From the IMG/VR virus record IMGVR_UViG_3300044645_002359, positions 62,001 to 126,000 of that record: a stretch of 64,000 bases of DNA. The stretch is one strand, 5' to 3'. This document shows positions 12,988 through 32,548 of this stretch, piece by piece. The notes below the pieces were generated by a model. The model was given only the letters and a program-made list of their open reading frames with translations. It was not told the DNA's origin and made no database searches. Made by a program: the position numbers and the translations under genes. Position 1 is the stretch's first letter. Every line of letters starts with the position of its first letter.

Positions 12988-12993
12988 GTCAAA

Positions 12994-13086: not shown

Positions 13087-13109
13087 CAAAGCAACCCTAG
13101 GAGAACACA

Positions 13110-13229: not shown

Positions 13230-13240
13230 ATTCTATAAAA

Positions 13241-13501: not shown

Positions 13502-13509
13502 CGAATCAA

Positions 13510-16058: not shown

Positions 16059-16725
16059 AGCGGAAAAGGGCAAATTCATTGCCTTTGAAGGAATAGATGG
16101 ATGCGGAAAGACAACTCAACTGGCAAGTATCGCCGATTGGCTGTGGTCAAGTGGATTACTGCCGGAAGGGACTCACGTTGTAGAAACCAGAGAACCCGGT
16201 TGTTTGTCACAAGTTAGAGCCCTACTTAAAGATCCTGACACTACGTTGACTCCGAGAGCCGAACTCCTATTGTTAATGGCTGATCGAGCCCAACATGTAG
16301 AAACTGTAATTAAGCCCGAACTCGAAAGGGGCAATTGGGTACTATGCGATCGGTTCTACACCAGCACCATGGCATATCAAGGTTGGGGAAGAGCCCTAGG
16401 GTGGCAGGCTGTTAAGCAAGCCCACGAACTCGCTTGTGGTTTGTTTTATCCAGACTTTGAGATCTACTTCGATGTCCCTGCTGATGAAGCTGCTTTGAGG
16501 ATTGAAAGGAGGAATAAGCAACTGAGACGGGAGCATGGAAGGAACTTTGAGGTTAAAGACCGTTTTGAGGCACAGGGGTCCTCATTTATGAACAGGGTAA
16601 TTGAGGGGTTCGATAATGCGATTAAGCTCCCTTTCCTTAAAGAGTACTCTCACGTTACGATCGACGGGTGTCGCAAACCTGAAGAGGTTACTGCCGAGTG
16701 CATTGAGAAAATTTCGAGGCTATGA
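16048..16725 (+). CDS. tmk: Thymidylate kinase
   Basis: FEGIDGCGKTTQ, TREPG, DRAQH, CDRF..ST.AYQG. Confidence 0.95.
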   Translation: MKTKAEKGKFIAFEGIDGCGKTTQLASIADWLWSSGLLPEGTHVVETREPGCLSQVRALLKDPDTTLTPRAELLLLMADRAQHVETVIKPELERGNWVLCDRFYTSTMAYQGWGRALGWQAVKQAHELACGLFYPDFEIYFDVPADEAALRIERRNKQLRREHGRNFEVKDRFEAQGSSFMNRVIEGFDNAIKLPFLKEYSHVTIDGCRKPEEVTAECIEKISRL

Positions 16726-17594: not shown

Positions 17595-17666
17595 GGGTTA
17601 ACCGAACCGAAACGGTCGGTCTCCGCCCTTGTTTTCGCTCCGAGAAAACGCTATAGTAAGAGCATG
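17595..17666 (+). promoter_or_regulatory. Operator-promoter module copy 4
   Basis: GGGTTAACCG; TTGTTT-17-TATAGT-6-ATG(17664). Confidence 0.85.
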
Positions 17667-18269
17667 GAACTCAAGTCTACCCTCTCCTCCTCGTTCTTCC
17701 GTCGGTTCTGCCCCGACCCCACCGTGATGTATGATCTTGGCGATCTCCACGCTGAGTTAAACGCTCGCTTCTTCAACGGTGAACTGCCTGTCCTTCCTTC
17801 CGACACTTACTCCGACAAGAACGGCGAGACTCGCACTCGCTTCGGCACCCTAAAGTGGGATGGCCGCATGGGACAGCGCACTCTGGGCACCTACAAGGCT
17901 TCGGCTCGCCGTGGACACGGAACCATCCGCCTGGCCCGCTCGATCGCCTCGGACCCTGTGAAGACCCGCAGCGTTCTTCTGCACGAGATGCTCCACAAGT
18001 ACCTTGACTTCAAAGGTATGGACGACGGTATTCTCGGACACGGCGAGAATTTCGTCACCGAAGCGAAACGCATCAATGAAAGCTGTCAAGCCGCTGGAGT
18101 TGACTACCGTATTCACTTCTACGATGAAGAAGTTACCAAGGACGAACCCTTCGTGATTTCCGAACTTGCTAAGAAAGAGATCTACTGCGGTAAAGACCTC
18201 GATGTAGCTCGCAACATGCAGGCTATTATGAGGGCAGCGTTCGACCAAAAGTTCGAATACTTCCAGTGA
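17664..18269 (+). CDS. SprT-like zinc metalloprotease
   Basis: LN.RFF.G.LP, LLHEMLH, HGENF. Confidence 0.85.
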   Translation: MELKSTLSSSFFRRFCPDPTVMYDLGDLHAELNARFFNGELPVLPSDTYSDKNGETRTRFGTLKWDGRMGQRTLGTYKASARRGHGTIRLARSIASDPVKTRSVLLHEMLHKYLDFKGMDDGILGHGENFVTEAKRINESCQAAGVDYRIHFYDEEVTKDEPFVISELAKKEIYCGKDLDVARNMQAIMRAAFDQKFEYFQ

Positions 18270-18725: not shown

Positions 18726-20213
18726 ATGACTATGGCAATAGAAAGTACAAAGCAAGCCGCTGCGGCAGTCTGCGATAAAAATACCAAATGCGACAATAGC
18801 TGCTCCGTTGGTGAAACCGTTGTCTGTGACTTACGCTCTCGCTCTGCCCCACGCAGAATTGACCTCGATACACTTTACAAGTGCGACCCGAAAGATTACA
18901 TCGGTTACTTCGCTGACGATTCCTCCTACGACAATCTTATTCAAGAAGACTGCGACGTTTACGTTGCCGGTGTCAAAGTTGTCGCTTTTCGTAAGTCCCT
19001 GTTCCCAAAACTGAAGGAAGGTTCCAAGGGCGACCCAAAGACTTGGGAATACTTCCGCTGGGCAGCCCGCGATCTGTATTCTGACCAGCGCGGTCTGGTT
19101 GCCGGTCGGGAACTTACAACCGATCTCGAAATCAGAGTAACTAATGGTATTCTAAACTTCTTCAAAAAAGCCATTGCTGGGCAAGTCACAGAAGTTGAAG
19201 AGGCTCTTAAAATTGTTGCTCTTTCTCCAGATCATGGTAAGCTTACAGTAAGAATCACCGAAGTCAAGAAAGACTATCCGGAAATTGCCAAAGCTCTTGA
19301 GCCCATCGAAGCCGAACTTCGTAAGAAAACGACGAGCGAAGAAAGAAAAGTAGAGCTGAAGAAAGCAAAGGGAGAAGAACTTGCGAAGTGGTTCCCGACC
19401 TGGTTGACACGAACTTGGGCTAAGGCTGAAAACAAAGTAGAGGCAGCTAAGCTAGGGGACGACAGGTATATCAGCAAGCAGCTGCGTTCAAACAAGTGCT
19501 ATTCTAACGTTCTTGGTGCCTTCGATAGAGGGGCAAGAAATCCTTACGGTCGCTTAACCGCTACTACTCTTAAAAACTACGACGGTTTCGTGAGTCATAC
19601 AGACATCTACCAAACCGCTTGTGCCGCTCTGAAAGAAACCCTAAACACACAAGAAAACCCCCGTTGGGATCGTCTTCACGACCGCTTCGGTAACGTGAAA
19701 GATCCACATTATAACCTTTTCGGTACGGTATTTACCGCCCTCACCTTAAACTGGAATTTCCGCTGTGCTATGCACTATGACGGGAACAATTGCGAAGGCG
19801 GTATTGCCGTTCTTACCGCAATGACTCAAGGCGAGTACGAAGGTCATTACCTTGTATTCCCAGAAATCCGGTGCGCCTTTGATCTTCGTGACGGGGACTT
19901 TATTGCAGGTGACAACCAGGGTTTGATTCATGGCAACACCGCTATGATTCCAAAGACTCCTGATGCGGAAAGAGTATCCTTCGTTTTCTATTCTCGCGAG
20001 CGTATGACCTTGCTTGATGACATGGAGTGCGAGGACTGCCGCCGCGATTTCATGAAATACGCAGCTGAGAACTACACTCAGTACGGTAAAGGTCACAAAA
20101 CCTGGAATGGTGTGTGGCAGGGAATGTGGAAGTCTTCGGAATGGATGGACTTCAAAGAACTTAACGGTGCGGAGCGTTGCTCAAACACCAACTACTGGGG
20201 AACTGAAAATTAA
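18726..20213 (+). CDS. TET/JBP-like 2OG-Fe(II) dioxygenase 1
   Basis: FGTVFTALTLNWNFRCAMHYD, G.Y.G.YLVFPE, HGNT, RVSFVFYSRE: HxD...H triad plus 2OG-binding Arg. Confidence 0.85.
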   Translation: MTMAIESTKQAAAAVCDKNTKCDNSCSVGETVVCDLRSRSAPRRIDLDTLYKCDPKDYIGYFADDSSYDNLIQEDCDVYVAGVKVVAFRKSLFPKLKEGSKGDPKTWEYFRWAARDLYSDQRGLVAGRELTTDLEIRVTNGILNFFKKAIAGQVTEVEEALKIVALSPDHGKLTVRITEVKKDYPEIAKALEPIEAELRKKTTSEERKVELKKAKGEELAKWFPTWLTRTWAKAENKVEAAKLGDDRYISKQLRSNKCYSNVLGAFDRGARNPYGRLTATTLKNYDGFVSHTDIYQTACAALKETLNTQENPRWDRLHDRFGNVKDPHYNLFGTVFTALTLNWNFRCAMHYDGNNCEGGIAVLTAMTQGEYEGHYLVFPEIRCAFDLRDGDFIAGDNQGLIHGNTAMIPKTPDAERVSFVFYSRERMTLLDDMECEDCRRDFMKYAAENYTQYGKGHKTWNGVWQGMWKSSEWMDFKELNGAERCSNTNYWGTEN

Positions 20214-20301
20214 CCCTTAGGTCGGTTACCGGAGCGGAGTAGATTCAAATTTACTCTGCTTTTATCCAGCTATATTAGAACTGAAGTTTACCAAGAGAGA
20301 A

Positions 20302-20526
20302 ATGACAAACTTTGACGACCTCTTTGAAGCAGTAGAATCTTCTTCATACGACTTGTCCAGAAACCTGGACACCATACGTTATGAAATTGAAGGTCTCACT
20401 AGGGAATATGAGGAACTACTTAATCTGTTGCAAGTTTCTGACCATCAGTCAGCGGTAGAAGCAATTATTTCTCTTAAGTCTAAACGAGATCTTACTGCAC
20501 CTCGGAGAGGATCGGAAACGCTTTAA
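20302..20526 (+). CDS. Hypothetical coiled-coil protein
   Basis: ORF track. Confidence 0.5.
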   Translation: MTNFDDLFEAVESSSYDLSRNLDTIRYEIEGLTREYEELLNLLQVSDHQSAVEAIISLKSKRDLTAPRRGSETL

Positions 20527-20616
20527 CGAAGTCCATATCAAAAGCTAATAACACTTATAGAGACCTTGTGGATTTGAGCTAACTCTCTTTAATTTCACCA
20601 CTATACGACAACAAAC

Positions 20617-20928
20617 ATGACGACTGAACCGCAAGCCGAAAGTGAAGAACAATCCTCTCAGGAAACTTTACAAACAACTGTTACTATCAATCTACCCCCA
20701 GATTTTGCAGAGGCTTTCAACTCTCTGGCAGAACGCGAAGGACTATCTCAAGATGCGCTGGTTATGCGCTCTCTTGGCCTTTACTCCGTAGCATCGCAAG
20801 CTGAGAAGGGGGGTTACGCTTTGTCTTTCACCCGGATTGAAGGAACCAACGACCTGACTGCCAAGGAAGCTATTCGCATCGAAGACGAGCCAGAATCTAA
20901 CTTGTTTATTCCAGGCAAGAGGCAATGA
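20617..20928 (+). CDS. Ribbon-helix-helix (CopG-like) protein
   Basis: VTINLP....F..LAEREGLSQ..LV.R.L.LY. Confidence 0.6.
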   Translation: MTTEPQAESEEQSSQETLQTTVTINLPPDFAEAFNSLAEREGLSQDALVMRSLGLYSVASQAEKGGYALSFTRIEGTNDLTAKEAIRIEDEPESNLFIPGKRQ

Positions 20929-22411
20929 TTCGAGTAGCAATAGCGAAAGAATTGCAGTCTAGAGCTGAACCATTGCGGATCGATAGGGGAACCCTTGAAA
21001 ACTGCCCTCGCAGTGAATACATTGGACAATTCCCCAAGACAACAGATTATGACACTGTCATAGACAAAGACTGTGACGTTTACGTCTCAGGTGTGAAAGT
21101 CTTGTCCTTCCGAAAAGCTCTCTTTCCAATTCTTTCCGAGGGTTCTTCCAAACAGAAAGAAACTTGGGACTTTTTCCGAGCAGCTTCAAAAGAAGTTTAT
21201 GGCACCCAAAGAGGTGTCGTTGCGGGCACAGAGTTTACAACTCGTCCCGAGTCACGCTTAACTAAAGGCCAGGTTGCTTTCTTCGCCGGTGCTTCAGTGG
21301 GTTTGATTACAACGCTTCCTCAAGCGCGAGAGGCTCTGGAAAGTTCCAACGAACTCACTAGCAAGACTCTCAAGATCAAGTATATAAAGAAAGACTACCC
21401 AGAACTTGCGGAAAAATGAAGCCCTTGGAGGCAGAAATTCGCACACTGAGCCCCGAAGACCCGAAACTAGAAAGTCTGAGAAACCAGAGAAGGGAACTAC
21501 TTTGGTGTTGGTTTGAACCTTGGTTACTGGAAGTTTGGTTGCCCTCTGAAAACAAAGTAGAAGAAGTCAAAAAAGTTTTAAACACTTACATTAGCTCTCA
21601 GTTAAATTTCAACCATTGCTACAGTAACGTCCTGGGGGCAATTGACCGTGGGGCAAGATTCCCCTATGGTCGTTTGAGCGGAACCACTCAGAGATACTAT
21701 GAGCAGTTCTCTAAATACAGAGACATTTATTACGCGGCCTGCGAAGGTTTCAGGTACAATTTTCCGGAGACCTGGAGCAAAGTTAAAGAAGTAATTTCGA
21801 AGGCTAAAGACCCTAACTACAACTTGTTCGGCACTGCCTTTACGAGCGTAACTCTAAACTTCAATTTTAAGACTGCCTACCACGTTGACAAGAACAACTT
21901 GAAAGGGGGGCTGGCTGTCTTGACTGCGTTCACAAAGGGAGACTATGAGGGCCACTACTTAGTGTTCCCCGAAGTTAAGCTAGCTTTCAACTTGAGAGAC
22001 GGGGACTTTATCGTAGGAGACACTCAAGTCCTACTTCACGGGAACAGCCCCATGACAAAACTCACTGAGGATGCTGAGCGGGTTTCTCTGGTTTTCTACT
22101 CTCGAGAGAATATGACCCGATTGGACGATCTTGATTGTGAAGAATGCCGAAAACAATTCATGAAGTTTTCACTTCAGTCCCTGAAGGAACGGGGCAAAGA
22201 TCACAAAGACTGGAGGGGCGTGTGGCAAGGAATGTGGACTTCTCAGGAGTGGTTAGACTTTCGAAAAGAAAGAAACTTGGAACACTGTTCAAACTCCAAC
22301 TGGCAGCTTTCTTCGCCTTACGAGAATGAAGTTACGAAAGAGATGAAGCTGTTTAAGGACGATCCAGGTGAGGGATGGAAACTCGTACAAGTATTTACAC
22401 AAGGTCGGTAA
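20925..22411 (+). CDS. TET/JBP-like dioxygenase 2, split by a 1-nt frameshift (20925-21419 + 21416-22411)
   Basis: Colinear paralog of 18726; [17 protein letters not shown]; break in A5 run at 21412-21416. Confidence 0.82.
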
Positions 22412-22476
22412 CCGCCCGGAAGCCTTCGGCTTCCTCCCTTGTTTCTGATCCACATAAACGCTATGATTGTTGTATG
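22406..22476 (+). promoter_or_regulatory. Operator-promoter module copy 5
   Basis: CGGTAACCG; TTGTTT-17-TATGAT-6-ATG(22474). Confidence 0.85.
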
Positions 22477-23058
22477 GAAATCTACTTTAGCACAGACGTT
22501 GAAACTGACGGGCCGATTCCCGGCCCCAACAGCATGCTCTCCCTAGGGTCAGCTGCGTTCTCCTCTTCAGGAAAGCTGCTGGCTACCTTCTCGGTGAACC
22601 TGGAGACCCTCCCCGGAGCCGAGCCGGACCCCTCTACCCAAGCGTGGTGGGAGGCCCACCCAGAGGCTTACAGAGCCTCCAGAGAAGGGACCCTGGCCCC
22701 GGACCAAGCCATGCTTGCCTTTTCACAGTGGGTCACTGCTACGGTCAGCTCGTACACTCAAGCGACTGTTAGAAAAGTTTCTCCAGTATTCGTCGGGTTC
22801 CCTGCAGGTTTTGACTTCCTCTTCGTGTATTGGTACCTTATTAAATTCACAGGGCAATCCCCGTTCAGCTTCTCCGCACTTGACGGTAAGACCTATGCCA
22901 TGGCACTTCTTAAGAAAGGCTACCGGCAATCTACAAAAAAGAACTATCCGAAGGAATGGTTCCCCCCGACTGACAAACACACTCACATTGCTGTGGAAGA
23001 TGCCATCGAGCAGGGTCGTATTTTCTGTAAGATGCTGGCCGCAAATGGACAATCTTGA
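22474..23058 (+). CDS. DEDDh 3'-5' exonuclease
   Basis: [19 protein letters not shown]; start refined by promoter geometry. Confidence 0.85.
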
Positions 23059-23454
23059 AATTTACAACCGTAAGCATAAGCTCGTGCTAGAACTGAGAGA
23101 ACTAGGCGAAGAAGAAGCTGAAGATAGCCTGTTGGAGGAGTTGGACGATCTCTGGCATAAGATGAATGAATCAGACCGTCATAAGGCCCAAGCTTTCACC
23201 TATACTTTGCTTTACGGATCCTCCTTACCCCCTACAATCTCCCATTCAGAAAAGATGAGAGAGTACTCTGGAAAAGTTAATGCATCTTTTAAGGCGCTAC
23301 TGGAAGGGGATATCGAAACTAGTGATACTCTCCTAAAGGAAGTCAGATCGCTATGGGAAGAATTAATCTCAGATGATTTCCCAGAAGAATGATTGAGATC
23401 CTAGCTGCATTCATAGCCTTCGGCTTGTTCATGTTTGTATTATCTGTCCTTTAA
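23045..23454 (+). CDS. Hypothetical (23045-23392) and 21-aa hydrophobic peptide (23389-23454)
   Basis: MDNLEIY...; [21 protein letters not shown] with ATGA overlap. Confidence 0.5.
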
Positions 23455-23466
23455 CTCTCAACCTTA

Positions 23467-24231
23467 ATGAAAGACCCACTCTTCCTTCTCCAAGCCGGAG
23501 GCCCGCTACCCACCGAGAAAATTGCCTGCAGCTTTTCGTGTTATCCAGTGAAGTATTGTCCTTTTTCGGATATCAAGAAGTTAGACCCCAAGGAATCCTT
23601 AACTCAACTTGTCCCAGTAGGTTCCGTAGAGTTTGTTAAAGCTTATAGTGAGCACGTGAGCATCGAGCTTCCCAGGGACTTTTCTTATGGCATTTGCGAC
23701 GGTCAACTTGACCAGTTCCTGATGAGATCTATGCGAAAGGGGACTTACGGTGAGGCAACCCTTATTGATTTTGTCAAACCCATTGAGATAAAGTTTTTCA
23801 CAGGAAATGTAAAAGGGCATCTTGAAATGGAGGCACCGGGGCTCATTCCGAATGATACTCCAGTCTGGGTTACCGAAGCCGTACCCTTCGGAGCCGAATT
23901 TCGCTTCTATATTCACGACTTCATTGGTGGTGGTAAAATCCAAGGTTGGTCTCGATACGATGATTCAAACATGCAATGTTCAGAGCCTGACTTTGGCCTG
24001 GTTGAAGCCGTAATGAAAGAGTTGGAGTACGGGGGTGCTCCAGGTGCCTATACAATTGACATTGGGTGGAGGCCTGATTTAGAACGCTATTGCTTAGTTG
24101 AACTCAATGATGCATGGGCATTAGGATTATACGAAAATGCAGACCCTCAATCTAATCCACCTACCCGACAGCAGTACGCCGATATGTTGGTCTCTCGCTG
24201 GAGACAAATTCTTTTCTGCAGTTTAGTATAA
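23467..24231 (+). CDS. ATP-grasp domain protein (DUF4343/R2K-like)
   Basis: PVGSVEFV, FVKP...K.FTG, EFRFYI, AYTIDIG, LVELND. Confidence 0.8.
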   Translation: MKDPLFLLQAGGPLPTEKIACSFSCYPVKYCPFSDIKKLDPKESLTQLVPVGSVEFVKAYSEHVSIELPRDFSYGICDGQLDQFLMRSMRKGTYGEATLIDFVKPIEIKFFTGNVKGHLEMEAPGLIPNDTPVWVTEAVPFGAEFRFYIHDFIGGGKIQGWSRYDDSNMQCSEPDFGLVEAVMKELEYGGAPGAYTIDIGWRPDLERYCLVELNDAWALGLYENADPQSNPPTRQQYADMLVSRWRQILFCSLV

Positions 24232-24890
24232 TGTGTGCTTTATTCGGATGTGACCTAGAAGAAGTCACGCAAAACAACATCCAAACAATACAACGCATTG
24301 CTCTTGAATCACAGGTCAGAGGCAAACATGCTACTGGCATCTCCTACATTGGAAAAAACGGTCTTGAGACAATCACTGAGCCTGTTTGTGCACAGGAATT
24401 TCTGAACATCTATGACATAAATGTTTGTGTCTCAGACGGCTGTCTGACTTTGATCGGTCATTGCCGCTATTCTACCTCTGATATTCGGTATAACCAGCCG
24501 CTAACGAACGGATCTCTTGCTATTGCTCACAATGGTGTCATTGAGCAGTCGCCTCCAGAGACTTGGACAAAGTTTGGGTACCAGCTAGAAACCACCAACG
24601 ATTCAGAGCTTGTGCTTCGAGCTATCGAAAATAAAGAACAACCCCTGAAAAAGTTTCCTGAAGCTTCTATGGCTGTCTTGGAGCTAAGAGAGACTGGCTC
24701 CATGCGCTATTACCGCAATGGTAAGAGACCTTTATGGAAGAGCGAAGTTGAGAACGGTTTTTTCCTCACCTCAACAAAAGACATTGCATTGAGGGCGGGA
24801 TTGAAGAATCCGGTCCGCTGCCTTCCGGGCTTCCTTTACCAAGGGAAGGCAGCAACTAAAATAATTGAAGTTGAAGAGCTGATTGCATGA
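24231..24890 (+). CDS. Class II (Ntn) glutamine amidotransferase
   Basis: N-terminal MC, RG.HATG, GHCRYST, NQP, HNGVI, NDSE. Confidence 0.88.
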   Translation: MCALFGCDLEEVTQNNIQTIQRIALESQVRGKHATGISYIGKNGLETITEPVCAQEFLNIYDINVCVSDGCLTLIGHCRYSTSDIRYNQPLTNGSLAIAHNGVIEQSPPETWTKFGYQLETTNDSELVLRAIENKEQPLKKFPEASMAVLELRETGSMRYYRNGKRPLWKSEVENGFFLTSTKDIALRAGLKNPVRCLPGFLYQGKAATKIIEVEELIA

Positions 24891-25765
24891 CTTACGATCC
24901 TCGAAAGTTTACATATGGTTACGAAATTGAGTGGGGGGATATACCGAGGGATTTCAACATACCTAAGCACTTGGGAACTTGGGAACATGCGGAAACTGAC
25001 ATCCTAAATTTGCACGGGGATTACGCTCTTAGAGCTGTAGATCCTTTGGGAACTGACCCACCCATGGGCGGCGAGATAAACACCAAGCCAACTCATACCT
25101 GGGAAGAGCAAGTTGAGAGAATCATAGAAATTCGCGACATGTTTATCAACGTCGGACACAATCCGACTGCATCTTTGGTGAACCACGGTCACTTACATGT
25201 TTTCGTGCCAGGGCTGAAGGAAGACTTAACAAGCTTACAAAAATTGGTCTCTTACGTTCGAGACAACCAACAACTGACTGTAGAAAAGTGTTACGGTTAC
25301 TATGACGATCCGGACATGAAGGGGGCGGTCAGAGGAGCCAAGACTTACTTGAAGCTCGATGGGGGCAGGTTAATGCCTCAGTACATGATTGATAACATAC
25401 TGAATTTGTCCACGGACTTTAACCACTTGATTAAGTTGCACGCTGCAGGCAAAGATGGTGTGTCAATGGGACGACCGTTCCGGTATGCAATAAACATCTA
25501 CTGTATGAAGCACACAGGTACTGTTGAGTTCCGCTGTTTTAGATCTAGTGTAAATCGCCGAGAGATTGAAGATCAGTTTCGCTTCGTAGAGGCATTCATT
25601 GATGCCGCCCTTAATGATGGTCCACCTGTTGAAACTATTCTTAAAGAGAACAATTATCAGTTCCCCCCTTACGTATGGAACAAGGAACACTGGAATGCTT
25701 GGGCGCTTACCAAGTGGGACAAGTCCAGGGGCAAAAAAGTCAGAAATTACTACGAGGTCCAATGA
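24887..25765 (+). CDS. Putative amidoligase (COOH-NH2 ligase) 1
   Basis: TYGYEIE, GGEINT.P, HLHV, RYAIN, TVEFRCF. Confidence 0.8.
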   Translation: MTYDPRKFTYGYEIEWGDIPRDFNIPKHLGTWEHAETDILNLHGDYALRAVDPLGTDPPMGGEINTKPTHTWEEQVERIIEIRDMFINVGHNPTASLVNHGHLHVFVPGLKEDLTSLQKLVSYVRDNQQLTVEKCYGYYDDPDMKGAVRGAKTYLKLDGGRLMPQYMIDNILNLSTDFNHLIKLHAAGKDGVSMGRPFRYAINIYCMKHTGTVEFRCFRSSVNRREIEDQFRFVEAFIDAALNDGPPVETILKENNYQFPPYVWNKEHWNAWALTKWDKSRGKKVRNYYEVQ

Positions 25766-26712
25766 TTGAGGCTACTTTCGGTGCTGAATATGAACTCGGA
25801 GACGTCAACCGCTTGCTGGAACTGCCTACTGGGGCGAATTGGAACTTTAAAGATCACAGCATTGCCAATTCCACGGGTATCGCAAATGATGAAAAAGCCA
25901 AGTTGTATACCATTGGCGGTGAGATAAACTCCGAGCCAACAGACACAATTGAAGGGCAGTTGAAAATCTGGGAATCTATAAGGGATTCCCAAAGTCAGAT
26001 TCATATTAATCACAGGACCAATTTACACTTACACATTCATGTGCCTGGGTTGAGAGAAGACCTTGGTCGGTTGAAGCGTCTGATGCAATACGTTCAAGAA
26101 CAACAAGACAGGGTCTACCAATTAATAGAACCCTTAGATCCCCCTGAGAAAGAAAATTACAAAACAGCAGCATCTTATAAGGGTGCTATGGATCGTTACA
26201 AGCGCCGTTTAGTTAGTCATCAGAACAGACTCAAACCGGCCCAGGTTAAGTCTTGTATGGAAGCCGTGACTGCTGAAGAGTTTATCAACGGTCACGCACC
26301 GAAAAACAAGAAGGGTGAACCCTTGTGGGCTTTGGCAGTTAGAGGTGGAATCAATATATCTCAACTTCGTGAAACTAATACAATTGAATTCCGGCACTTT
26401 ACACCTACCTTGAGTGCAGAAGAGCTAGAGTGTTGCTTCACTTGGATCCATGAGTTCATGCATGCCGCCTTGGTTACAGGCGAATCTGTCGATGATATCT
26501 ACTCAAGAAAAACCTGGAAGTTCCCACCGTTCGCTGCCTACGACCACGATATCGATGTGGTTTTCCGCTGGACAGACTTGGAAAAGAACAAACGTTCCGA
26601 AGTGAAACAACGACTCGATCGCTTGGCAGAACACTTTGATACTTATTCCCAACCAGCGAGGGATATGTCAGAATTTGTCAGCTCAGAAAGTGGTGGAAAA
26701 CTAGCTCTTTGA
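25762..26712 (+). CDS. Putative amidoligase 2 (paralog)
   Basis: TFGAEYE, GGEINS.P, LHLHIH, RGGIN, TIEFRHF; ATGA overlap. Confidence 0.8.
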   Translation: MIEATFGAEYELGDVNRLLELPTGANWNFKDHSIANSTGIANDEKAKLYTIGGEINSEPTDTIEGQLKIWESIRDSQSQIHINHRTNLHLHIHVPGLREDLGRLKRLMQYVQEQQDRVYQLIEPLDPPEKENYKTAASYKGAMDRYKRRLVSHQNRLKPAQVKSCMEAVTAEEFINGHAPKNKKGEPLWALAVRGGINISQLRETNTIEFRHFTPTLSAEELECCFTWIHEFMHAALVTGESVDDIYSRKTWKFPPFAAYDHDIDVVFRWTDLEKNKRSEVKQRLDRLAEHFDTYSQPARDMSEFVSSESGGKLAL

Positions 26713-27088
26713 TTTGCTGAGCTACTGCGCGATGCATTTCTTCACCCTTGTGTCTGAATGGGTCTTCAACGTTCCAGTTTCGAACCTTCAACGGATCCAC
26801 AGAAAAGTTCTTGTTTATACGGTCTACGTGCAAATGAGACATGCAAATGACTTGGTCCGCCCAGTCCAACAAGTCTTGAGAGTAAGGTTGTGCGATGTGT
26901 TGCTCACCACTGTAGCCCATCTCTGCCAAAACTCGTCTCATTTTGGGAGCCATTCTTGAGCGGTCCACAGCTTGTTTAGAAGTGCCACACGAATCTACTT
27001 TGTACAATCCCGTATTATGAAAACTAAGGATAACATGAGCAGCAGCACTACGATTCACACACCCTGTACAAATAAAGAGTACTTTCAT
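26678..27088 (-). CDS. LMW phosphatase / arsenate-reductase fold protein
   Basis: VLFICTGCVNRS (CX5R), WAD.VICM, EDPF. Confidence 0.88.
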   Translation of the reverse strand: MKVLFICTGCVNRSAAAHVILSFHNTGLYKVDSCGTSKQAVDRSRMAPKMRRVLAEMGYSGEQHIAQPYSQDLLDWADQVICMSHLHVDRINKNFSVDPLKVRNWNVEDPFRHKGEEMHRAVAQQIKELVFHHFLS

Positions 27089-27136
27089 GTTCAGTGCCTA
27101 TAATAAGTATGCATAACCTTACCCTAATGCTTCGTC

Positions 27137-27793
27137 ATGTACTATGTATACAAAATAACTTTCGAAGAGGTACCCCACTTTTACATTGGAATTCGCAAGT
27201 GCCCACCCCTTATAGCACCACAGGAGGATAAATACTTGGGAAGCCCTTGCACACACCGGTCTTATTGGAAAATATACACACCCAAAAAACATATAATGCA
27301 TTGCTACGAGAGTCAAGAAGAGGCTTACCAGGTGGAGCACACCCTTATTATACAGAACTGGAAGAATAAGTATTCCTTGAACAGAGGGGTTGCAGGAGCT
27401 GTACACGAAGAGATATTATCGAATAATGGCAAAAGAGTGGCACAACTCTGGCACAACCGGGTTGAAGAGGACCACAAATTAAGAGAGTGGGCAACGGAAA
27501 ATGCTAGAAAATGTTTGTCTGGGTATCATGAGAGACGTCAGGAGAACGAGGAGGAAAACGAAAGATTTCTAAGTCAATGTTCCGAGAACGGGAAGAGAAC
27601 AGGAGCCTCTAACATAGGCAAATATAACGAAAGAAAAGATGAGCTGGAGTATATAAGAGTAAGAAAAGAGAACGGCAGGAACCGAAAAGGCATGATTTGG
27701 ATTAACAACGGCTCAGAAAATAAAGTGGTCTGGCCGCACATGATGGAGGAGTACTCTACCCGGGGATACAAAAGAGGTAGGAAACATGCTTGA
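27137..27793 (+). mobile_element. Free-standing GIY-YIG-like homing endonuclease
   Basis: YVYKIT...FYIG, D.YLGS, E..LI, SLN; C-terminal WINNG..NK. Confidence 0.7.
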
Positions 27794-28802
27794 AGTTACA
27801 GCTTGCTCATCAGACTACAGATTGTTGGAGAATAGAAGGGAGGGTTTTTTGCAATGGTGGATTGCCTCAACGGCGGCACTTGACGTCGACCCCAGCATGT
27901 GGATGATGAGGTACTTAAACGACCGTTATGAGCATAGCACCGAAGAGAAGCTTTGGTTCGCTTGGCTGTTCCACACATATAATTTACCCACATGTTGGAC
28001 CCTGAAGCAAGAATTTCCAGACGAAGAGCTGGCAAGCGTGGAAAGATTCGACACTTTCGTTGGTGAAAATTACCCTCGAATTCGTCATGAAAAAGACACT
28101 AAGTGGTCGCGTGGACACCTGGCAGCAATGTATGCGAGTTACCATGATTGGGTTGGTGAGAGTACTCAGAGAGACAAGTTCTGGGAACTGTGCCAAGGCT
28201 CCCCCGAAGAGAACTTTTGGGCAATCTGGAATTTGGTTATGGAGAAGTTTTTCAAGTTCGGCCGGTACACCACTTTCTTTTACTTACAAACTCTTAAGCA
28301 AACTTGCAATTTGCCTTTAGACTGTCCCTCTCTATTTTTGAGCGATTACTCTGGCAGTAAAAGCCATAGAAATGGCCTGTGTTTTGCTGCCGGCAAAGAC
28401 GATTGGGTCAACCAAAAATTGACTCCCGCAGAGTACTCTTGGCTAGAGGGCTTCGGTGCTGACTTGCTTGTAGAAGCATATTCGCGGTGGCCCGACTTCA
28501 AAGGCGACATGGACAACTTCGCCCTTGAAACCTGTCTGTGCTCATACAAAAAAGTTTTCCGGACAGCTAACGGTCGTTATGTCAATTATTACAACGATCG
28601 AGTCTCTGAGCAAATTGCCAAGGCAGAAGGAGATGGTTGGTCAGGTATTGACTGGAATGTTTTGCATCAGTGCCGCAGCGAATGCTCCAACGGGCGTCTT
28701 CGTAAAAAAGACAAAATTGACAAAACGAAAATGCACCTTTTCATGGAGCGTGGAACTTTTCATTTTCTGTGGCACGATGGGGAACTGTCTCAGCTTACTT
28801 AG
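27786..28802 (+). CDS. aGPT-pyrophosphorylase clade 2-like amino acid:DNA transferase
   Basis: KFGRYTTFFYLQTL, SHRNGL, LETCLCSYKK, GRY..YY.DR. Confidence 0.78.
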   Translation: MLEVTACSSDYRLLENRREGFLQWWIASTAALDVDPSMWMMRYLNDRYEHSTEEKLWFAWLFHTYNLPTCWTLKQEFPDEELASVERFDTFVGENYPRIRHEKDTKWSRGHLAAMYASYHDWVGESTQRDKFWELCQGSPEENFWAIWNLVMEKFFKFGRYTTFFYLQTLKQTCNLPLDCPSLFLSDYSGSKSHRNGLCFAAGKDDWVNQKLTPAEYSWLEGFGADLLVEAYSRWPDFKGDMDNFALETCLCSYKKVFRTANGRYVNYYNDRVSEQIAKAEGDGWSGIDWNVLHQCRSECSNGRLRKKDKIDKTKMHLFMERGTFHFLWHDGELSQLT

Positions 28803-28854
28803 AGCTGAAGAAGCTATACTGACTTTGTAACCAACTTTCTCTTTGCATTCACGT

Positions 28855-29343
28855 ATGAAACTGACACATTACTTCGGAGTTCCAGGGTGCGGCAAAACCA
28901 CTCTGATGCGCAACAAACTTAGTGTCCTTGAAGCCAATGAGCCGGGGGAAAACGTACAAGAAGGACTCGTCAGATACCACAAGTTTGAAAAACAAAAAAC
29001 TATCGTGCTAGGGGTGTACGACGATAGCACTTTCGCTGGTTTAGACAAACTTTCAAAAGGGGTTGGTCCAAAGTTCCGTCAATGGCTGTTAGACAACGCA
29101 GAAAAGTATAAGGGTTGGGAAGTTTTCTCAGAAGGAGAAAGATTCTCTAACAACCCCACTCTAGACGCAATGTTTGCTACAGGGAACATGACACTTGTGC
29201 TTGTCCAGGTTAGCGACGAAGAACTTGAGAAAAGAAGAGCAGCTAGGAACAATACCCAAAATGAGACTTGGATGAAAGGTATGCAAACTCGGATGAATAA
29301 CCTTGCCCAAAAGTATACTCACACCGTGCTCAACAACGACTGA
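28855..29343 (+). CDS. P-loop nucleotide kinase of the type linked to aGPT-PPase2
   Basis: GVPGCGKTT, GVY...FAG.D.LS, EGERF.N, R..R...Q...W.KG..T. Confidence 0.75.
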   Translation: MKLTHYFGVPGCGKTTLMRNKLSVLEANEPGENVQEGLVRYHKFEKQKTIVLGVYDDSTFAGLDKLSKGVGPKFRQWLLDNAEKYKGWEVFSEGERFSNNPTLDAMFATGNMTLVLVQVSDEELEKRRAARNNTQNETWMKGMQTRMNNLAQKYTHTVLNND

Positions 29344-29927: not shown

Positions 29928-31271
29928 ATGTCAAAAGAGAGTCAACCACAAAAAGACCCAATATTGCAATCGATCCGAATTGCCCTAGACGCCGTTAAAT
30001 CAGCAGGCAGCACAGGAAAGCCGGGTATCCCGCCTACAACAGGGACAAGGCTGATGGCTCTTCTATCCGTTGCAATGTTAAACACTTTGGCGTCCTTTGA
30101 CAGAAGTGTAAAGCCCTACTTCAAATCTAGCAAAGCACTTAATGGTGCAAATCAAAGTGCGGCCATCCTGGGAGCAGCCCAAAGGATTTTGTTGAGGGGA
30201 ATTCCCGGTGAATCGCGACTTATCTATTCTGAGTTTGCCAAGGCATTTCGGGGGTTGAAGCTCAAGTCGGTGAAAGACTTAATAAGTGTAAAATTCGGGG
30301 TTGAAATTGCCGACAAGGTGATAGCCTCAAGGTCGCAAGATGGGTCTGAAAATCAAACTCCGCTTAACAGCAACGGAAACCCTCAGGATTATTTATGGAA
30401 ACCCGCGACATCTGGCCCCACTGCTGGGATCGCACTTGGGGTTAATTGGGGCTCGGTTAAGCCGTGGGTCATTGGGAGTACCAGTGCGTACCAGACAGAT
30501 GGCTTGAATGCTAGGCCAGGCGCGAATTTAGAAGCATATGCCCAGCAATTAGCAGAAGTGAGGTTGTTCGGGGGCTTAAATGATACATCCCTCACCAAGA
30601 CTCAACGCACAGAGAACCAGACGCATATCGCTAAGTTCTGGGCCTATGACCGAGCTGATACGTTCCGCCCCTACGGACAACTCCTAGACATTGCCTCTGA
30701 GATAGCAGCAAACCAGAAAACAAGCACTCAGACCAATGCCAAATTGTTCGCAAGCTTGAGCATGGCAATGGCTGACTCCGTGATTTGTGCGTGGAACGAG
30801 AAGTACAAAGTCCTGCAACCACGACCCTATGACGTTATTACCGGGGCGTTTTCTGATAAGGATGGGACACCGATCACTGTTCGCGACTCCGAGTGGCAAT
30901 CTCTCTTGTCATCTATCAATGGTGTTCAATCGCCACCGTTTCCAGATTTCTTATCGGGGCACTCAGCCATGGGTGGAGCCTTCGCCAGCGTAATGACTCA
31001 CTTTTTCGGAGACAAGCTAGTCTTCTCGACCCAATCCCAGGATTTACCAGGTTTTACAAGAACTTTCGATGGTAGTATACCTGCAGGTTCTCTTGGTGAC
31101 ATTGGCCTTATCGTGAACTCACCAATATACCGCCCAAATAGCTTCTACGAAGCTGGAATTGAGGATGCTGTTAGCCGTGTGTATGGAGGAGTCCATGTAC
31201 GGGAAGCCTGCCTTGACTCCTTTAATCTGGGGGTCAAAGTCGGTATTGCGGCTGTCTTGTGGGGTCGGTAA
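29928..31271 (+). CDS. Vanadium-dependent haloperoxidase-like (PAP2 superfamily)
   Basis: KYKVLQPRP (KX6RP), PPFPDFLSGHS, SRVYGGVH. Confidence 0.85.
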   Translation: MSKESQPQKDPILQSIRIALDAVKSAGSTGKPGIPPTTGTRLMALLSVAMLNTLASFDRSVKPYFKSSKALNGANQSAAILGAAQRILLRGIPGESRLIYSEFAKAFRGLKLKSVKDLISVKFGVEIADKVIASRSQDGSENQTPLNSNGNPQDYLWKPATSGPTAGIALGVNWGSVKPWVIGSTSAYQTDGLNARPGANLEAYAQQLAEVRLFGGLNDTSLTKTQRTENQTHIAKFWAYDRADTFRPYGQLLDIASEIAANQKTSTQTNAKLFASLSMAMADSVICAWNEKYKVLQPRPYDVITGAFSDKDGTPITVRDSEWQSLLSSINGVQSPPFPDFLSGHSAMGGAFASVMTHFFGDKLVFSTQSQDLPGFTRTFDGSIPAGSLGDIGLIVNSPIYRPNSFYEAGIEDAVSRVYGGVHVREACLDSFNLGVKVGIAAVLWGR

Positions 31272-32023: not shown

Positions 32024-32548
32024 ATGGCAACCACATACAAACCACCCGCACCACTCCCGCCGAAATGGCAGGGCTACAGCGTTTTTCTCGCCGGATCCAT
32101 CGAAATGGGTGCTGCTCCTAATTGGCAAGCCGAGGTAGAACGCAACCTTGCCGGTCTTGACATCGATATCTTCAATCCTCGCCGCGACAACTGGGACCCA
32201 ACATGGATGCAAAGCGCAGACAATCCCCAGTTCCGTGAACAAGTCGAGTGGGAACTTGATACCCTAGATAGGGCCAACTTGGCCGTGATGTATTTAGTAC
32301 CGGGAACCCTGAGCCCGATATCGTTATTGGAACTTGGGATTTATGCTGCCAAGGAGAGAAATAAGCTGATTGTATGCTGCCCTGAAGGCTTCCACCGAAA
32401 GGGTAACGTTGACATTGTTTGCGAGCGATACGGCGTCAAGCAAGTTGCTTCCCTAGATGAGCTTACGGACGCTATTCGGACTCGGTATTCTGAGTGGCAA
32501 ATGATATGGGAAGAATGTGGGTTTGGCAACCGGGTGATCCATCTCTAA
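32024..32548 (+). CDS. Nucleoside 2-deoxyribosyltransferase-like protein
   Basis: VFLAGSIEMG..W, FNPRR, QVEWE, SPISLLELG. Confidence 0.85.
   Translation: MATTYKPPAPLPPKWQGYSVFLAGSIEMGAAPNWQAEVERNLAGLDIDIFNPRRDNWDPTWMQSADNPQFREQVEWELDTLDRANLAVMYLVPGTLSPISLLELGIYAAKERNKLIVCCPEGFHRKGNVDIVCERYGVKQVASLDELTDAIRTRYSEWQMIWEECGFGNRVIHL

What the first reader, a model, noticed from the sequence alone, without database searches (positions are those of the whole stretch)
18726..29343. Candidate new DNA hypermodification pathway: twin TET/JBP dioxygenases + kinase + amino acid:DNA transferase + a four-gene amide/peptide-ligase operon
Seen: within 10.6 kb lie two paralogous HxD..H dioxygenases, an ATP-grasp/GATase/amidoligase/amidoligase block, a CX5R phosphatase, an aGPT-PPase2-like gene and a P-loop kinase. 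Established: TET/JBP enzymes oxidise the 5-methyl of T or 5mC in DNA. In characterised phage thymine hypermodification, 5hmU is activated by a kinase and an aGPT-PPase-family enzyme then installs an amino acid or amine; there the 5hmU comes from a dUMP hydroxymethylase before replication. Inference: this phage makes hm-pyrimidine after replication (an ordinary tmk is present; no hydroxymethylase or C5-methyltransferase is in the window). It would then phosphorylate the base, attach an amino acid, and amidate or extend it with the GATase and ligases, giving an uncharacterised, possibly peptidyl, base. Subsets of these associations were predicted by comparative genomics; I know of no chemistry determined for this full set.
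Basis: partly seen in the sequence, partly recalled or inferred. Interest (0 to 1): 0.9.

Follow-up and report, generated by a model that had tools for sequence, protein, structure and literature searches.

The report
Cyanophage thymine hypermodification gene cassette
A large cyanophage carries a gene set that most likely oxidises thymine in its own DNA and then builds a nitrogen-rich amide side chain on it; gene sets of this type have been noted in viral metagenomes, but their chemical product has never been determined.

Summary
Within 18.7-29.3 kb lie two TET/JBP dioxygenase paralogues, an R2K ATP-grasp, a class II glutamine amidotransferase (GATase), two paralogous glutamine-synthetase-like amidoligases, an LMW-PTP (CX5R, minus strand), an amino acid:DNA transferase (ADDT) and a P-loop kinase.

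Corrections:
- The second TET is split into two ORFs by a one-base frameshift.
- A homing-endonuclease-like gene interrupts the cassette.
- The ATP-grasp is a backbone gene. Relatives that lack all the other genes still carry it, so the ligase block that belongs to the module has three genes, not four.

In related S-CBWM1-like cyanophage contigs, one genomic slot holds this module, a TET-associated glycosyltransferase module, or nothing. TET is present exactly when the slot is filled. TET + GATase + amidoligase + ADDT + kinase also occurs inside unrelated T4-like phages.

The pathway reading (T to 5hmU to phospho-5hmU to N-substituted base, then amide chemistry) is well supported by context. 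Lee et al. 2021 and O'Toole et al. 2026 already published this association from metaviromes. The final chemistry remains unknown.

My census shows that GATase tracks ADDT more closely than it tracks the amidoligase. This suggests a testable alternative: ammonia-fed ADDT makes 5-aminomethyluracil, which the ligases then acylate.

Verdict: real, a variant of a known kind, moderate interest.

The parts
17664..18269 (+). SprT-like zinc-metalloprotease-family gene that always accompanies the TET gene.
   Evidence: Pfam SprT-like, 38 bits; an HEMLH motif is visible in the translation. It sits directly upstream of TET in the window, L004, L007/L008/L011, L022-L027 and S-CBWM1, and is absent from the TET-less relatives L019-L021.
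18726..20213 (+). TET1: full-length 5-methylpyrimidine dioxygenase (495 aa), made of a conserved N-terminal domain and the catalytic double-stranded beta-helix.
   Evidence: Pfam Tet_JBP, 8e-14. H350-x-D352, H402 and R424 are invariant or nearly so. The model has pLDDT 92, and its best PDB neighbours are CcTet, CMD1, NgTET1 and TET2, with E down to 3e-11. dN/dS against L004 is 0.047.
20925..21419 (+). TET2 N-terminal domain fragment (164 aa).
   Evidence: 45% identical to residues 32-193 of TET1. It is in frame with the catalytic part in L027/L028. In the window it is cut off by a one-base frameshift.
21416..22411 (+). TET2 catalytic fragment (331 aa); its ATG overlaps the stop codon of the N-terminal fragment.
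   Evidence: Pfam Tet_JBP, 8e-19. The H-x-D and H residues are present. It is 94% identical to L004, with dN/dS 0.041.
23467..24231 (+). R2K-clade ATP-grasp. It is adjacent to the module but is a backbone gene and probably not part of the pathway.
   Evidence: Pfam R2K_3, 5e-22. It is present with an empty slot and no TET in L019-L021 and L029, and with the TAGT module in L022-L028 and L031. It is absent from all 27 or more cassettes on other backbones.
24231..24890 (+). Class II (Ntn) glutamine amidotransferase; ammonia donor.
   Evidence: Pfam GATase_6, 1e-8. Met-Cys at the N-terminus and the RGKHATG motif are conserved in 8 of 8 homologues. It is present in 33 of 35 ADDT-bearing TET loci.
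24887..25765 (+). Amidoligase 1: glutamine-synthetase-like carboxylate-amine ligase of the type found in GNAT-containing cassettes.
   Evidence: It is 60-64% identical to the sole ligase of the T4-like-phage and L009 cassettes. dN/dS is 0.021.
25759..26712 (+). Amidoligase 2: a paralogue (about 31% identical to amidoligase 1) of the type that pairs with LMW-PTP.
   Evidence: 45% identical to the sole ligase of L007/L008/L011 and 37% to that of phage Simon; in both it sits next to an LMWPc gene.
26678..27088 (-). LMW-PTP/ArsC-family phosphatase (C-x5-R-S), opposite strand, module-specific.
   Evidence: Pfam LMWPc, 4e-14. It is conserved at this position in L004, L006 and L007/L008/L011, and lies next to the amidoligase in phage Simon. 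It is absent from loci with the TAGT module or an empty slot.
27137..27793 (+). Homing-endonuclease-like insert (GIY-YIG-like N-terminus); selfish element, not part of the pathway.
   Evidence: PHROG 314 homing endonuclease, 3e-9. It is absent from L004, L006 and L007, where LMW-PTP abuts ADDT.
27786..28802 (+). ADDT/AADT (formerly aGPT-Pplase2): transfers an N- or O-nucleophile onto the activated 5-methylene of the base.
   Evidence: Pfam ADDT, 3e-18. Best hits among cultured phages are ViI-like phages, at about 28% identity. dN/dS is 0.061.
28843..29343 (+). P-loop kinase (Ploopntkinase3): predicted 5hmU DNA kinase. The likely true start is the ATG four codons further in.
   Evidence: Pfam Ploopntkinase3, 2e-11, with a Walker A GVPGCGKTT motif. 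It follows ADDT in all relatives.

Best explanation
This is a post-replicative thymine hypermodification module carried by an S-CBWM1-like cyanophage.

Proposed steps:
1. TET1, and probably the catalytic fragment of TET2, hydroxylate the 5-methyl of thymine in phage DNA to give 5hmU. This is inferred from family, context and the absence of any 5mC or hmdUMP source.
2. The P-loop kinase phosphorylates 5hmU. This is inferred from the characterised ViI/M6/PaMx11 pathways.
3. ADDT displaces the phosphate with a nitrogen nucleophile.
4. The module-specific GATase and the two glutamine-synthetase-like amidoligases then create amide bonds on that side chain.

I commit to the following version. The GATase delivers glutamine-derived ammonia to ADDT, giving 5-aminomethyluracil directly. 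Each amidoligase then uses ATP to join a free carboxylate to a DNA-borne amine. By analogy with glutamine synthetase, gamma-glutamylcysteine ligase and PafA, that carboxylate is the gamma-carboxylate of glutamate. The product is an acyl- or aminoacyl-aminomethyluracil.

The LMW-PTP is a co-evolving partner of amidoligase 2. I suggest it removes phosphate from unreacted phospho-5hmU or from a phosphorylated intermediate, but this is a weak inference.

The ATP-grasp, the exonuclease, the RHH-like gene and the PAP2-like gene are neighbours, not members. The overall purpose is presumably protection of phage DNA from host nucleases, as for other thymidine hypermodifications.

None of the chemistry is shown here. 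Steps 1-3 are strong inferences (about 0.75). The order and substrates of the amide steps are a moderate inference (about 0.4 for the version stated).
For: Co-inheritance:
- The same six genes occur in the same order in L004 and L006.
- A minimal version, TET-GATase-amidoligase-LMWPTP-ADDT-kinase, occurs in L007/L008/L011.
- TET-GATase-amidoligase-GNAT-ADDT-kinase is embedded in replication modules of unrelated T4-like phages, in two different gene orders.
- In the census, 33 of 35 ADDT loci carry the GATase and 27 of 35 an amidoligase.

Slot logic on the S-CBWM1-like backbone:
- Empty slot with no TET: 4 contigs.
- TAGT glycosylation module with TET: 8 contigs plus S-CBWM1.
- ADDT module with TET: the window, L004 and L040; L006 carries the module but its contig ends before the TET position.

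All module genes have dN/dS of 0.02-0.09 against L004. The window contains no C5-methyltransferase, hydroxymethylase, PLP decarboxylase or radical SAM gene.

Evidence for the ammonia-to-ADDT version:
- Six loci have TET-GATase-GNAT-ADDT-kinase with no amidoligase.
- Phage Simon has ADDT, a flavin oxidase, an amidoligase, LMWPc, HMUDK and a hydroxymethylase, with no GATase. That is the PaMx11-type route to 5-aminomethyl-dU (PMC8989533) with an amidoligase added.

Literature: phage 5mYOX enzymes oxidise T post-replicatively and only 6% co-occur with a C5-methyltransferase (PMC13229309). 5-HMUDK and AADT chemistry is established (PMC8989533).
Against: - No chemistry was measured, and the phage is known only as a metagenomic contig.
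- All characterised AADTs use amino acids or putrescine, not ammonia.
- Wherever GATase and amidoligase are both present, the GATase is immediately upstream of and overlaps the amidoligase. This fits the rival reading in which ammonia goes to the ligase.
- The amidoligase assignment rests on sub-threshold Pfam hits and weak Foldseek E-values (3e-3, TM about 0.4).
- The rest of the 201-kb genome was not seen, so a C5-methyltransferase or hydroxymethylase elsewhere cannot be excluded.
- TET2 is frameshifted.
Confidence: 0.62

Rival explanations
1. Amidation of a tethered amino acid. ADDT installs a free amino acid, as in ViI/M6/SP10. The amidoligases phosphorylate its free carboxylate(s), and GATase-derived ammonia converts them to carboxamides. 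This removes the negative charge without a decarboxylase. Two ligases would mean two carboxylates (for example Glu or Asp) or two different adducts.
For: - The GATase gene is directly upstream of and overlaps the amidoligase in every locus that has both.
- Glutamine synthetase itself uses ammonia.
- Characterised AADTs use amino acids (PMC8989533).
- The module has no PLP decarboxylase or radical SAM enzyme, so another way of neutralising the carboxylate would be expected.
Against: - Six loci keep GATase + ADDT + kinase with no ATP-dependent ligase.
- Phage Simon keeps the amidoligase + LMWPc with no GATase, next to a flavin oxidase that in PaMx11 removes the glycine carboxylate.
Confidence: 0.3
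2. The ligase block (ATP-grasp + GATase + two amidoligases) is an independent LUZ24-type phage 'amidoligase system'. It would modify a protein or make a small metabolite, and merely sits next to the DNA-modification genes.
For: - LUZ24-like phages carry a COOH-NH2 ligase, an amidoligase, a GATase, a RimK ATP-grasp and a gamma-glutamyl cyclotransferase with no TET, ADDT or kinase.
- R2K ATP-grasps were predicted to modify proteins (PMC4431377).
- The ATP-grasp here is indeed independent of the DNA genes.
Against: - GATase and amidoligase are exchanged together with ADDT and the kinase as one slot-filling unit.
- They lie between TET and ADDT on at least three unrelated backbones.
- They are not found on this backbone without ADDT.
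- Similarity to the LUZ24 ligases is marginal (hhalign probability 11%).
Confidence: 0.08
3. The dioxygenases act on 5-methylcytosine made by a methyltransferase encoded outside the window, and the kinase and ADDT decorate 5hmC.
For: - Burke et al. 2021 considered a P-loop kinase acting on 5hmC possible for some contigs (PMC8256090).
- 137 kb of the contig were not examined.
Against: - The window has no C5-methyltransferase.
- None lies next to TET in any of about 90 related loci inspected by similarity, and none is annotated in the first 64 kb of S-CBWM1.
- Active 5mC-type phage TETs have an adjacent methyltransferase (PMC8256090, PMC13229309).
Confidence: 0.07

Closest known systems
Thymidine hypermodification pathways of phages ViI, M6 and PaMx11 (5-HMUDK + AADT/aGPT-Pplase + tailoring enzymes; Lee et al. 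2018, 2021)
   Same: The window has a P-loop 5hmU kinase and an ADDT-family transferase side by side. The logic is post-replicative, and the ViI-like ADDTs are the best hits among cultured phages.
   Different: - 5hmU comes from a DNA dioxygenase, not a dUMP hydroxymethylase.
- There is no PLP decarboxylase, radical SAM or flavin enzyme.
- Tailoring is by a GATase, two glutamine-synthetase-like ligases and an LMW-PTP, none of which has a characterised role in any DNA pathway.
- ADDT identity to the ViI-like proteins is only about 28%.
Phage T-dioxygenases (5mYOX clades C1/C2; O'Toole et al. 2026, PMC13229309) and the TET_JBP-containing T-hypermodification contigs of Lee et al. 2021 (PMC8989533)
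   Same: These are TET/JBP enzymes without a neighbouring C5-methyltransferase, linked to GATase, a P-loop kinase and AADT. This is the published genomic association to which the window belongs.
   Different: - No ParB-like partner is present.
- The enzymes belong to a subfamily with a conserved N-terminal domain of about 200 aa.
- An SprT-like gene is the constant neighbour instead.
- Clade membership could not be tested, because the papers' sequences are not held.
Base J-type pathway / TET-associated glycosyltransferase (TAGT) modules
   Same: An orthologous TET1 (82% identical) in sister contigs, and a more distant one (58% identical) in the cultured phage S-CBWM1, is followed by TAGT, sugar-activation genes and an APH-like kinase in the same slot.
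   Different: The window carries the ADDT/GATase/ligase module in that slot, and TAGT is absent.
LUZ24-type phage amidoligase system (COOH-NH2 ligase, amidoligase, GAT-II, RimK ATP-grasp, GGCT). It was predicted by Iyer et al. 2009; I cite that paper from memory, as it is not held.
   Same: It combines a class II GATase with two GS-like ligases and an ATP-grasp.
   Different: - LUZ24 has no TET, ADDT or kinase.
- Here there is no gamma-glutamyl cyclotransferase.
- The ATP-grasp here is of the R2K clade, not RimK, and is not module-linked.
- Sequence similarity is marginal.
Ammonia-channelling amidation and amination systems (asparagine synthetase B, GlmS, MurT/GatD, Gat-QueC in 7-deazaguanine DNA modification). 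The general enzymology is from my own knowledge; the Vibrio context below was seen.
   Same: A class II GATase supplies nascent ammonia to a partner enzyme. In Vibrio phage 2.275.O, an amidoligase homologue and an Ntn aminohydrolase sit beside QueC, QueF and FolE genes.
   Different: The partner and acceptor here are unknown. No fusion or channel can be shown with these tools.

Membership tests
TET/JBP (5mYOX) DNA dioxygenases | Pfam PF12851 score above the gathering threshold, and the TET-type fold. | tested here: met
   TET1 scores 51.6 bits and the TET2 catalytic fragment 67.9 bits against a cut-off of 34.9. The TET1 model has pLDDT 92, and its top PDB neighbours are CcTet, CMD1, NgTET1 and TET2.
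TET/JBP (5mYOX) DNA dioxygenases | Fe(II) triad H-x-D...H and a 2-oxoglutarate-binding Arg. | tested here: met
   H350, D352 and H402 are invariant, and R424 is invariant or nearly so, in alignments of 10, 11 and 32 sequences. The motifs are present in both paralogues.
TET/JBP (5mYOX) DNA dioxygenases | Thymine rather than 5mC is the substrate. | not testable with these tools
   The only evidence is contextual: the window has no C5-methyltransferase, and the downstream enzymes are known only for 5hmU.
ParB-dependent T-dioxygenase subclass (PMC13229309) | A co-localised ParB-like activator gene. | tested here: not met
   No window ORF of 60 aa or more gives a ParB-family Pfam hit. The TET neighbours are an SprT-like gene, an unknown 120-aa gene and an RHH-like gene.
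ADDT / AADT (aGPT-Pplase2, PF18724) | Pfam score above the gathering threshold, and adjacency to a 5hmU-type P-loop kinase. | tested here: met
   66.6 bits against a cut-off of 26.2. The kinase lies immediately downstream here and in the relatives whose contigs reach that far.
ADDT / AADT (aGPT-Pplase2, PF18724) | Identity of the transferred nucleophile (amino acid, amine or ammonia). | not testable with these tools
   About 28% identity to ViI-like proteins is too low to transfer specificity.
5hmU DNA kinase (Ploopntkinase3) | Pfam score above the gathering threshold, and a Walker A motif. | tested here: met
   44 bits against a cut-off of 27. The Walker A motif GVPGCGKTT is present.
Class II (Ntn) glutamine amidotransferase | N-terminal catalytic Cys directly after Met, plus a Pfam GATase_6/7 hit. 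| tested here: met
   Met-Cys is conserved in 8 of 8 homologues. GATase_6 scores 35.5 bits against a cut-off of 27. H-N-G and D-S-E motifs are visible in the translation.
Amidoligase_2 / glutamine-synthetase-like carboxylate-amine ligases | Pfam PF12224 score above the gathering threshold. | tested here: not met
   Amidoligase 1 scores 18.1 bits against a cut-off of 22, and amidoligase 2 gives no hit. 20 of 25 family members give only sub-threshold hits, the best at 5e-4.
Amidoligase_2 / glutamine-synthetase-like carboxylate-amine ligases | GS/GCS2 fold with conserved metal- and ATP-binding Glu, His and Arg residues. | tested here: inconclusive
   The model has pLDDT 92. The top 50 PDB neighbours listed are all of the YbdK, glutamine synthetase, gamma-glutamylcysteine ligase or PafA type, but with E of 3e-3 or worse and TM about 0.4. 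E13, E15, E63, H102, H104, R199, E214 and R216 are invariant.
R2K ATP-grasp as a member of this pathway | Co-inheritance with the other pathway genes. | tested here: not met
   The Pfam family assignment is solid. However, the gene occurs with an empty slot, with the TAGT module and with the ADDT module alike, and is absent from cassettes on other backbones.
LMW-PTP / ArsC family | Pfam LMWPc score above threshold and the C-x5-R-S/T P-loop. | tested here: met
   53.4 bits against a cut-off of 23.2. The motif is at residues 7-14.
ViI/M6-type pre-replicative thymidine hypermodification | dUMP hydroxymethylase (thymidylate synthase family) supplying 5hmdU. | tested here: not met
   No window ORF gives a Thymidylat_synt hit. 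The rest of the contig was not seen.

The most novel reading that the evidence does not exclude
The GATase feeds ammonia to an ADDT that makes 5-aminomethyluracil in DNA without any amino-acid intermediate. Glutamine-synthetase-fold ligases then use ATP to build a gamma-glutamyl or short peptidyl amide chain on the base. These would be the first ATP-dependent amide-bond-forming enzymes shown to act on DNA, and would give a new family of peptidyl-thymine bases. An LMW-PTP would act as a dedicated helper of one ligase type.
Probability: 0.3. Interest if true: 0.8.

Novelty: new variant of a known kind. Interest (0 to 1): 0.55.

Why it matters
Thymidine hypermodifications block many restriction and CRISPR nucleases, and they are a source of DNA-tailoring enzymes.

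The GATase and amidoligase genes are the commonest uncharacterised companions of AADT and the kinase in metaviromes: they occur in 33 and 27 of 35 TET-linked loci here. No role in DNA modification has yet been assigned to them.

This window and its relatives offer a compact, reconstitutable gene set, natural 'deletion series' and a sharp pair of alternative mechanisms. The deletion series comprises a minimal six-gene version, a GNAT-only version and a flavin-oxidase version.

The slot swap between a glycosylation module and the amino/amide module behind the same dioxygenase shows how phages exchange DNA chemistries as cassettes.

Tried and rejected
- A nucleotide search of the region against GenBank phages found nothing.
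- A profile search of the amidoligase family against PDB sequences gave only a chance hit.
- The papers of Iyer et al. 2009 and 2013 are not held. What I say of them is from memory.
- Supplements of the two key papers are not held, so I could not compare the window's TETs with the characterised 5mYOX97, 5mYOX176 or 5mYOX89, or check whether these contigs were among those published.
- Walking along the 201-kb contig failed, because the window's edge protein is not in the exact-match index.
- The P0123 context was a 2-kb contig and gave no information.
- The 32-sequence TET alignment was too diverse for locus finding, so I used the 10-sequence one.
- The promoter and terminator scan did not exceed shuffled expectation for terminators and gave nothing usable.
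- I considered whether the TET N-terminal domain is a fused ParB-like module. I found no Pfam support and could not search the domain alone by fold.
- I considered that the TET2 frameshift marks a decaying cassette. I rejected this because of strong purifying selection on every module gene.

Full report
**What the window is.** The window is bases 62001-126000 of the 201,260-bp viral contig IMGVR_UViG_3300044645_002359. It has no nucleotide match among GenBank phages. Its mitochondrial-type family A DNA polymerase (56547-59483) is 57.5% identical to that of Synechococcus phage S-CBWM1, and the other hits are all cyanophages. Nearly all genes lie on the + strand.

**Checking the observation.** Pfam confirms the following:
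- two Tet_JBP proteins
- an R2K ATP-grasp
- a GATase
- an ADDT (the current name of aGPT-Pplase2)
- a Ploopntkinase3 kinase
- tmk at 16048-16725

The two 'amidoligases' are mutual paralogues at about 31% identity but fall below Pfam's threshold. I therefore built a 25-sequence family alignment. It shows invariant E-x-E, GGE, H-x-H and E-F-R motifs. Twenty of the 25 members give sub-threshold Amidoligase_2 hits. An AlphaFold model (pLDDT 92) has PDB neighbours that are all YbdK, glutamine synthetase, gamma-glutamylcysteine ligase or PafA, although with weak scores. I accept them as glutamine-synthetase-fold carboxylate-amine ligases, with formal Amidoligase_2 membership unproven.

The TET1 model (pLDDT 92) matches CcTet, CMD1, NgTET1 and TET2, with E down to 3e-11. 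The iron triad is invariant and the 2-oxoglutarate Arg invariant or nearly so.

No C5-methyltransferase, thymidylate-synthase-like enzyme or ParB domain occurs in any window ORF of 60 aa or more.

First, the second dioxygenase is broken. 20925-21419 is the N-terminal domain and 21416-22411 the catalytic part, and together they total 495 aa like TET1. Compared with L004, the window has one base fewer at the junction.
- Intact full-length copies exist in L027 and L028.
- In L004 the first ~100 codons of the same domain are replaced by an unrelated small ORF.
- In L040 the domain carries frame changes and has diverged to 54% identity, while the catalytic part stays at 95%.
- So three contigs of this lineage carry three different lesions in the TET2 N-domain, while the catalytic part is under strong purifying selection (dN/dS 0.041).
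- This looks like recurrent loss of that domain rather than a sequencing error or a dying gene.

Second, 27137-27793 is a homing-endonuclease-like insert that is absent from relatives.

Third, the amidoligase 2 start is most likely the ATG at 25759.

**Synteny on the cyanophage backbone.** Loci were fetched with ADDT, with the ATP-grasp and with the TET profile. They share this backbone:

tmk - DUF6915 - x - [SprT-like - x - TET1] - RHH-like - [TET2] - exonuclease - x - ATP-grasp - [SLOT] - x - RNA ligase

The slot has three states:
- Empty, with no SprT and no TET: L019, L020, L021, L029.
- A TET-associated glycosyltransferase (TAGT, PF20691) with an isomerase/HAD-like gene, a nucleotidyltransferase and an APH-like kinase, together with SprT and TET1: L022-L028 and L031. 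The cultured phage S-CBWM1 carries the same four genes directly after its TET.
- GATase - amidoligase 1 - amidoligase 2 - LMW-PTP - ADDT - kinase: the window, L004 (= L030) and L006 (= L034). The window and L004 also show SprT, TET1 and TET2 upstream, whereas the L006 contig starts inside the ATP-grasp gene and its TET region is unseen. L040 is cut off after the first ligase.

TET presence and slot occupancy therefore coincide perfectly on this backbone. The ATP-grasp, the exonuclease and the RHH-like gene are present in all three states. The ATP-grasp is thus a backbone gene, so the 'four-gene ligase operon' is really a three-gene block belonging to a six-gene swappable module. PAP2 (29928-31271) is absent from L004 and is not part of it either.

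**The module on other backbones.**
- A minimal form, SprT - TET - GATase - one amidoligase (type 2) - LMW-PTP - ADDT - kinase, occurs in L007/L008/L011.
- Amidoligase 1 has 592 detectable homologues in metagenomes, none carrying a Pfam label.
- Their contexts are T4-like phages (gp23, UvsY, UvsW, gp45, gp44, PolB) carrying TET - GATase - amidoligase - GNAT - x - ADDT - kinase. In another lineage the order is GATase - amidoligase - GNAT - ADDT - TET - x - kinase.
- I took a census of 76 loci, the best of at least 557 TET-subfamily matches in IMG/VR.

| Locus content | Number of loci |
|---|---|
| ADDT present | 35 |
| ADDT + GATase | 33 |
| ADDT + amidoligase | 27 |
| of those 27: with GNAT | 21 |
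| of those 27: with LMW-PTP | 6 |
| TAGT present | 13 |
| None of these genes | 22 |
| ATP-grasp present | 13, all on the S-CBWM1-like backbone |

The window's cassette is a mosaic. Amidoligase 1 is closest (60-64%) to the sole ligase of the GNAT-type cassettes. Amidoligase 2, LMW-PTP, ADDT, the kinase and TET are closest to the L007 type.

**Mechanism.** Steps 1-3 (T to 5hmU by TET; phosphorylation; substitution by ADDT) follow from established enzymology:
- the kinase and AADT families (PMC8989533)
- the demonstration that phage 5mYOX enzymes are post-replicative thymine dioxygenases (PMC13229309)
- the absence here of any source of 5mC or hmdUMP

For the amide steps, two observations separate GATase from amidoligase.
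- Six loci (L066, L067, L079, L084, L106, L113) have TET - (small 2OG oxygenase) - GATase - GNAT - ADDT - kinase and no amidoligase.
- The GenBank record 'phage Simon' has ADDT - flavin oxidase (DAO) - amidoligase (type 2, 37%) - LMWPc - HMUDK - Nmad5 - thymidylate-synthase-like hydroxymethylase and no GATase.

In PaMx11 a flavin enzyme converts the glycine adduct to 5-aminomethyl-dU, which an acetyltransferase then acylates (PMC8989533).

The simplest scheme covering all variants treats 5-aminomethyluracil as the common intermediate. It would be made either by glycine plus flavin oxidase, or by GATase ammonia plus ADDT. It would then be N-acylated by a GNAT and/or by ATP-dependent glutamine-synthetase-fold ligases. 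Every characterised relative of those ligases activates a glutamate gamma-carboxylate.

It is favoured by the invariable GATase-amidoligase adjacency and by known AADT substrates. I put the two at roughly 0.4 and 0.3.

The LMW-PTP co-varies with type 2 ligases across very distant phages. Its role is unexplained. Dephosphorylation of leftover phospho-5hmU is my guess.

[quoted passage not shown] 2021. O'Toole et al. 2026 state that their ParB-dependent T-dioxygenases are consistently linked with GATases, P-loop kinases and AADTs.

The window has no ParB. Its TETs belong to a subfamily with a conserved N-terminal domain (about 30 full-length representatives at 50% identity among 2,128 hits) and a constant SprT-like neighbour.

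LUZ24-like Pseudomonas phages carry a GATase, two COOH-NH2 ligases, a RimK ATP-grasp and a gamma-glutamyl cyclotransferase without any DNA-modification genes. This is the older, still uncharacterised 'phage amidoligase system'. Similarity to it is marginal.

**Verdict.** The finding is real and the pathway reading is largely right, but it is not a new kind of system. It is an uncharacterised variant of TET-initiated thymidine hypermodification that the literature has flagged twice. What is new here:
- exclusion of the ATP-grasp from the module
- the slot exchange with a TAGT module behind orthologous dioxygenases
- two ligase types, each with its own partner (GNAT or LMW-PTP)
- recurrent loss of the TET2 N-domain
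- a testable alternative order of reactions

Noticed in passing
window 20925-22411; L004 3628-5091; L040 10101-11583; L027 5660-7144: The N-terminal domain of the second TET paralogue is damaged in three different ways in three contigs of the ADDT-module lineage: a frameshift at the domain junction, replacement of the first ~100 codons, and internal frame changes with divergence. The catalytic part stays 94-95% identical with dN/dS 0.04. Intact copies exist in the TAGT-module lineage.
   Followed up: yes
window 24231-29343; L027 8809-11546; L019-L021 about 8762-9000: One genomic slot between the ATP-grasp gene and the gene at window 29303 holds the ADDT/GATase/ligase module, a TAGT glycosylation module, or nothing. 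The SprT-TET unit 4 kb upstream is present only when the slot is filled.
   Followed up: yes
window 17664-18269; L001 2725-3342; L007 about 5926-6519: An SprT-like (Spartan-family) metalloprotease gene lies directly upstream of TET wherever this cyanophage-type TET occurs, including cultured S-CBWM1, where it is annotated 'transcription elongation protein'. It is absent from the T4-like cassettes. It might be a DNA-protein crosslink protease or a TET cofactor; this was not tested.
   Followed up: partly
window 27137-27793; L008 5977-6357; L012 11424-11978: Endonuclease-like genes sit beside ADDT in three lineages: GIY-YIG/PHROG 314-like in the window, Endonuclease VII in L008, and a weak T5orf172 hit in L012. 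This suggests a homing hot spot at this gene.
   Followed up: partly
L037 (phage Simon, PQ683277.1) 5849-13528: An unannotated GenBank sewage phage carries ADDT - DAO flavin oxidase - amidoligase - LMWPc - HMUDK - Nmad5 - thymidylate-synthase-like gene. This is a pre-replicative 5hmU version of the pathway with the same amidoligase/LMW-PTP pair and no GATase.
   Followed up: partly
L036 (Vibrio phage 2.275.O._10N.286.54.E11) 7881-13089: A distant amidoligase homologue (27% identical) lies next to QueF-like, YhhQ-like, QueC, Ntn aminohydrolase and GTP cyclohydrolase I genes. That is a 7-deazaguanine DNA-modification cluster in a cultured 349-kb phage.
   Followed up: no
L106 9335-12913 and five similar loci (L066, L067, L079, L084, L113): A variant cassette in T4-like phages has the order TET - small 2OG-Fe(II) oxygenase - GATase - divergent GNAT - ADDT - kinase, with no amidoligase.
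   Followed up: partly
window 32024-32548: A Nuc_deoxyri_tr2 (nucleoside 2-deoxyribosyltransferase / dNMP N-glycosidase-like) gene (2.5e-34) lies just after the RNA ligase. Enzymes of this family can clear unusual dNMPs from the pool.
   Followed up: no
window 15009-16058, 23467-24231: An ADP-ribosylglycohydrolase gene lies 7 kb upstream of the R2K ATP-grasp. Burroughs et al. 2015 (PMC4431377) noted R2K genes linked to ADP-ribosylglycohydrolases in Firmicutes and proposed protein targets. This fits an ATP-grasp role unrelated to DNA.
   Followed up: no
window 36146-37225; 48987-50069; 52681-54696; 56547-59483: Other cargo includes a histone-deacetylase-family gene (1.6e-87), a DUF1517 gene (1.7e-54), a gyrase/topoisomerase IV subunit A-like gene and a polymerase-gamma-like DNA polymerase. 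One ORF among those scanned together matches the Lar restriction-alleviation family; I did not localise it.
   Followed up: no
whole contig (201,260 bp): Iyer et al. 2021 (PMC7824862) reported no TET/JBP hydroxylases in the jumbo phages known then. This contig at the 200-kb threshold, and relatives on 277-279-kb contigs (L027, L021), would be exceptions if the contigs are single genomes.
   Followed up: no
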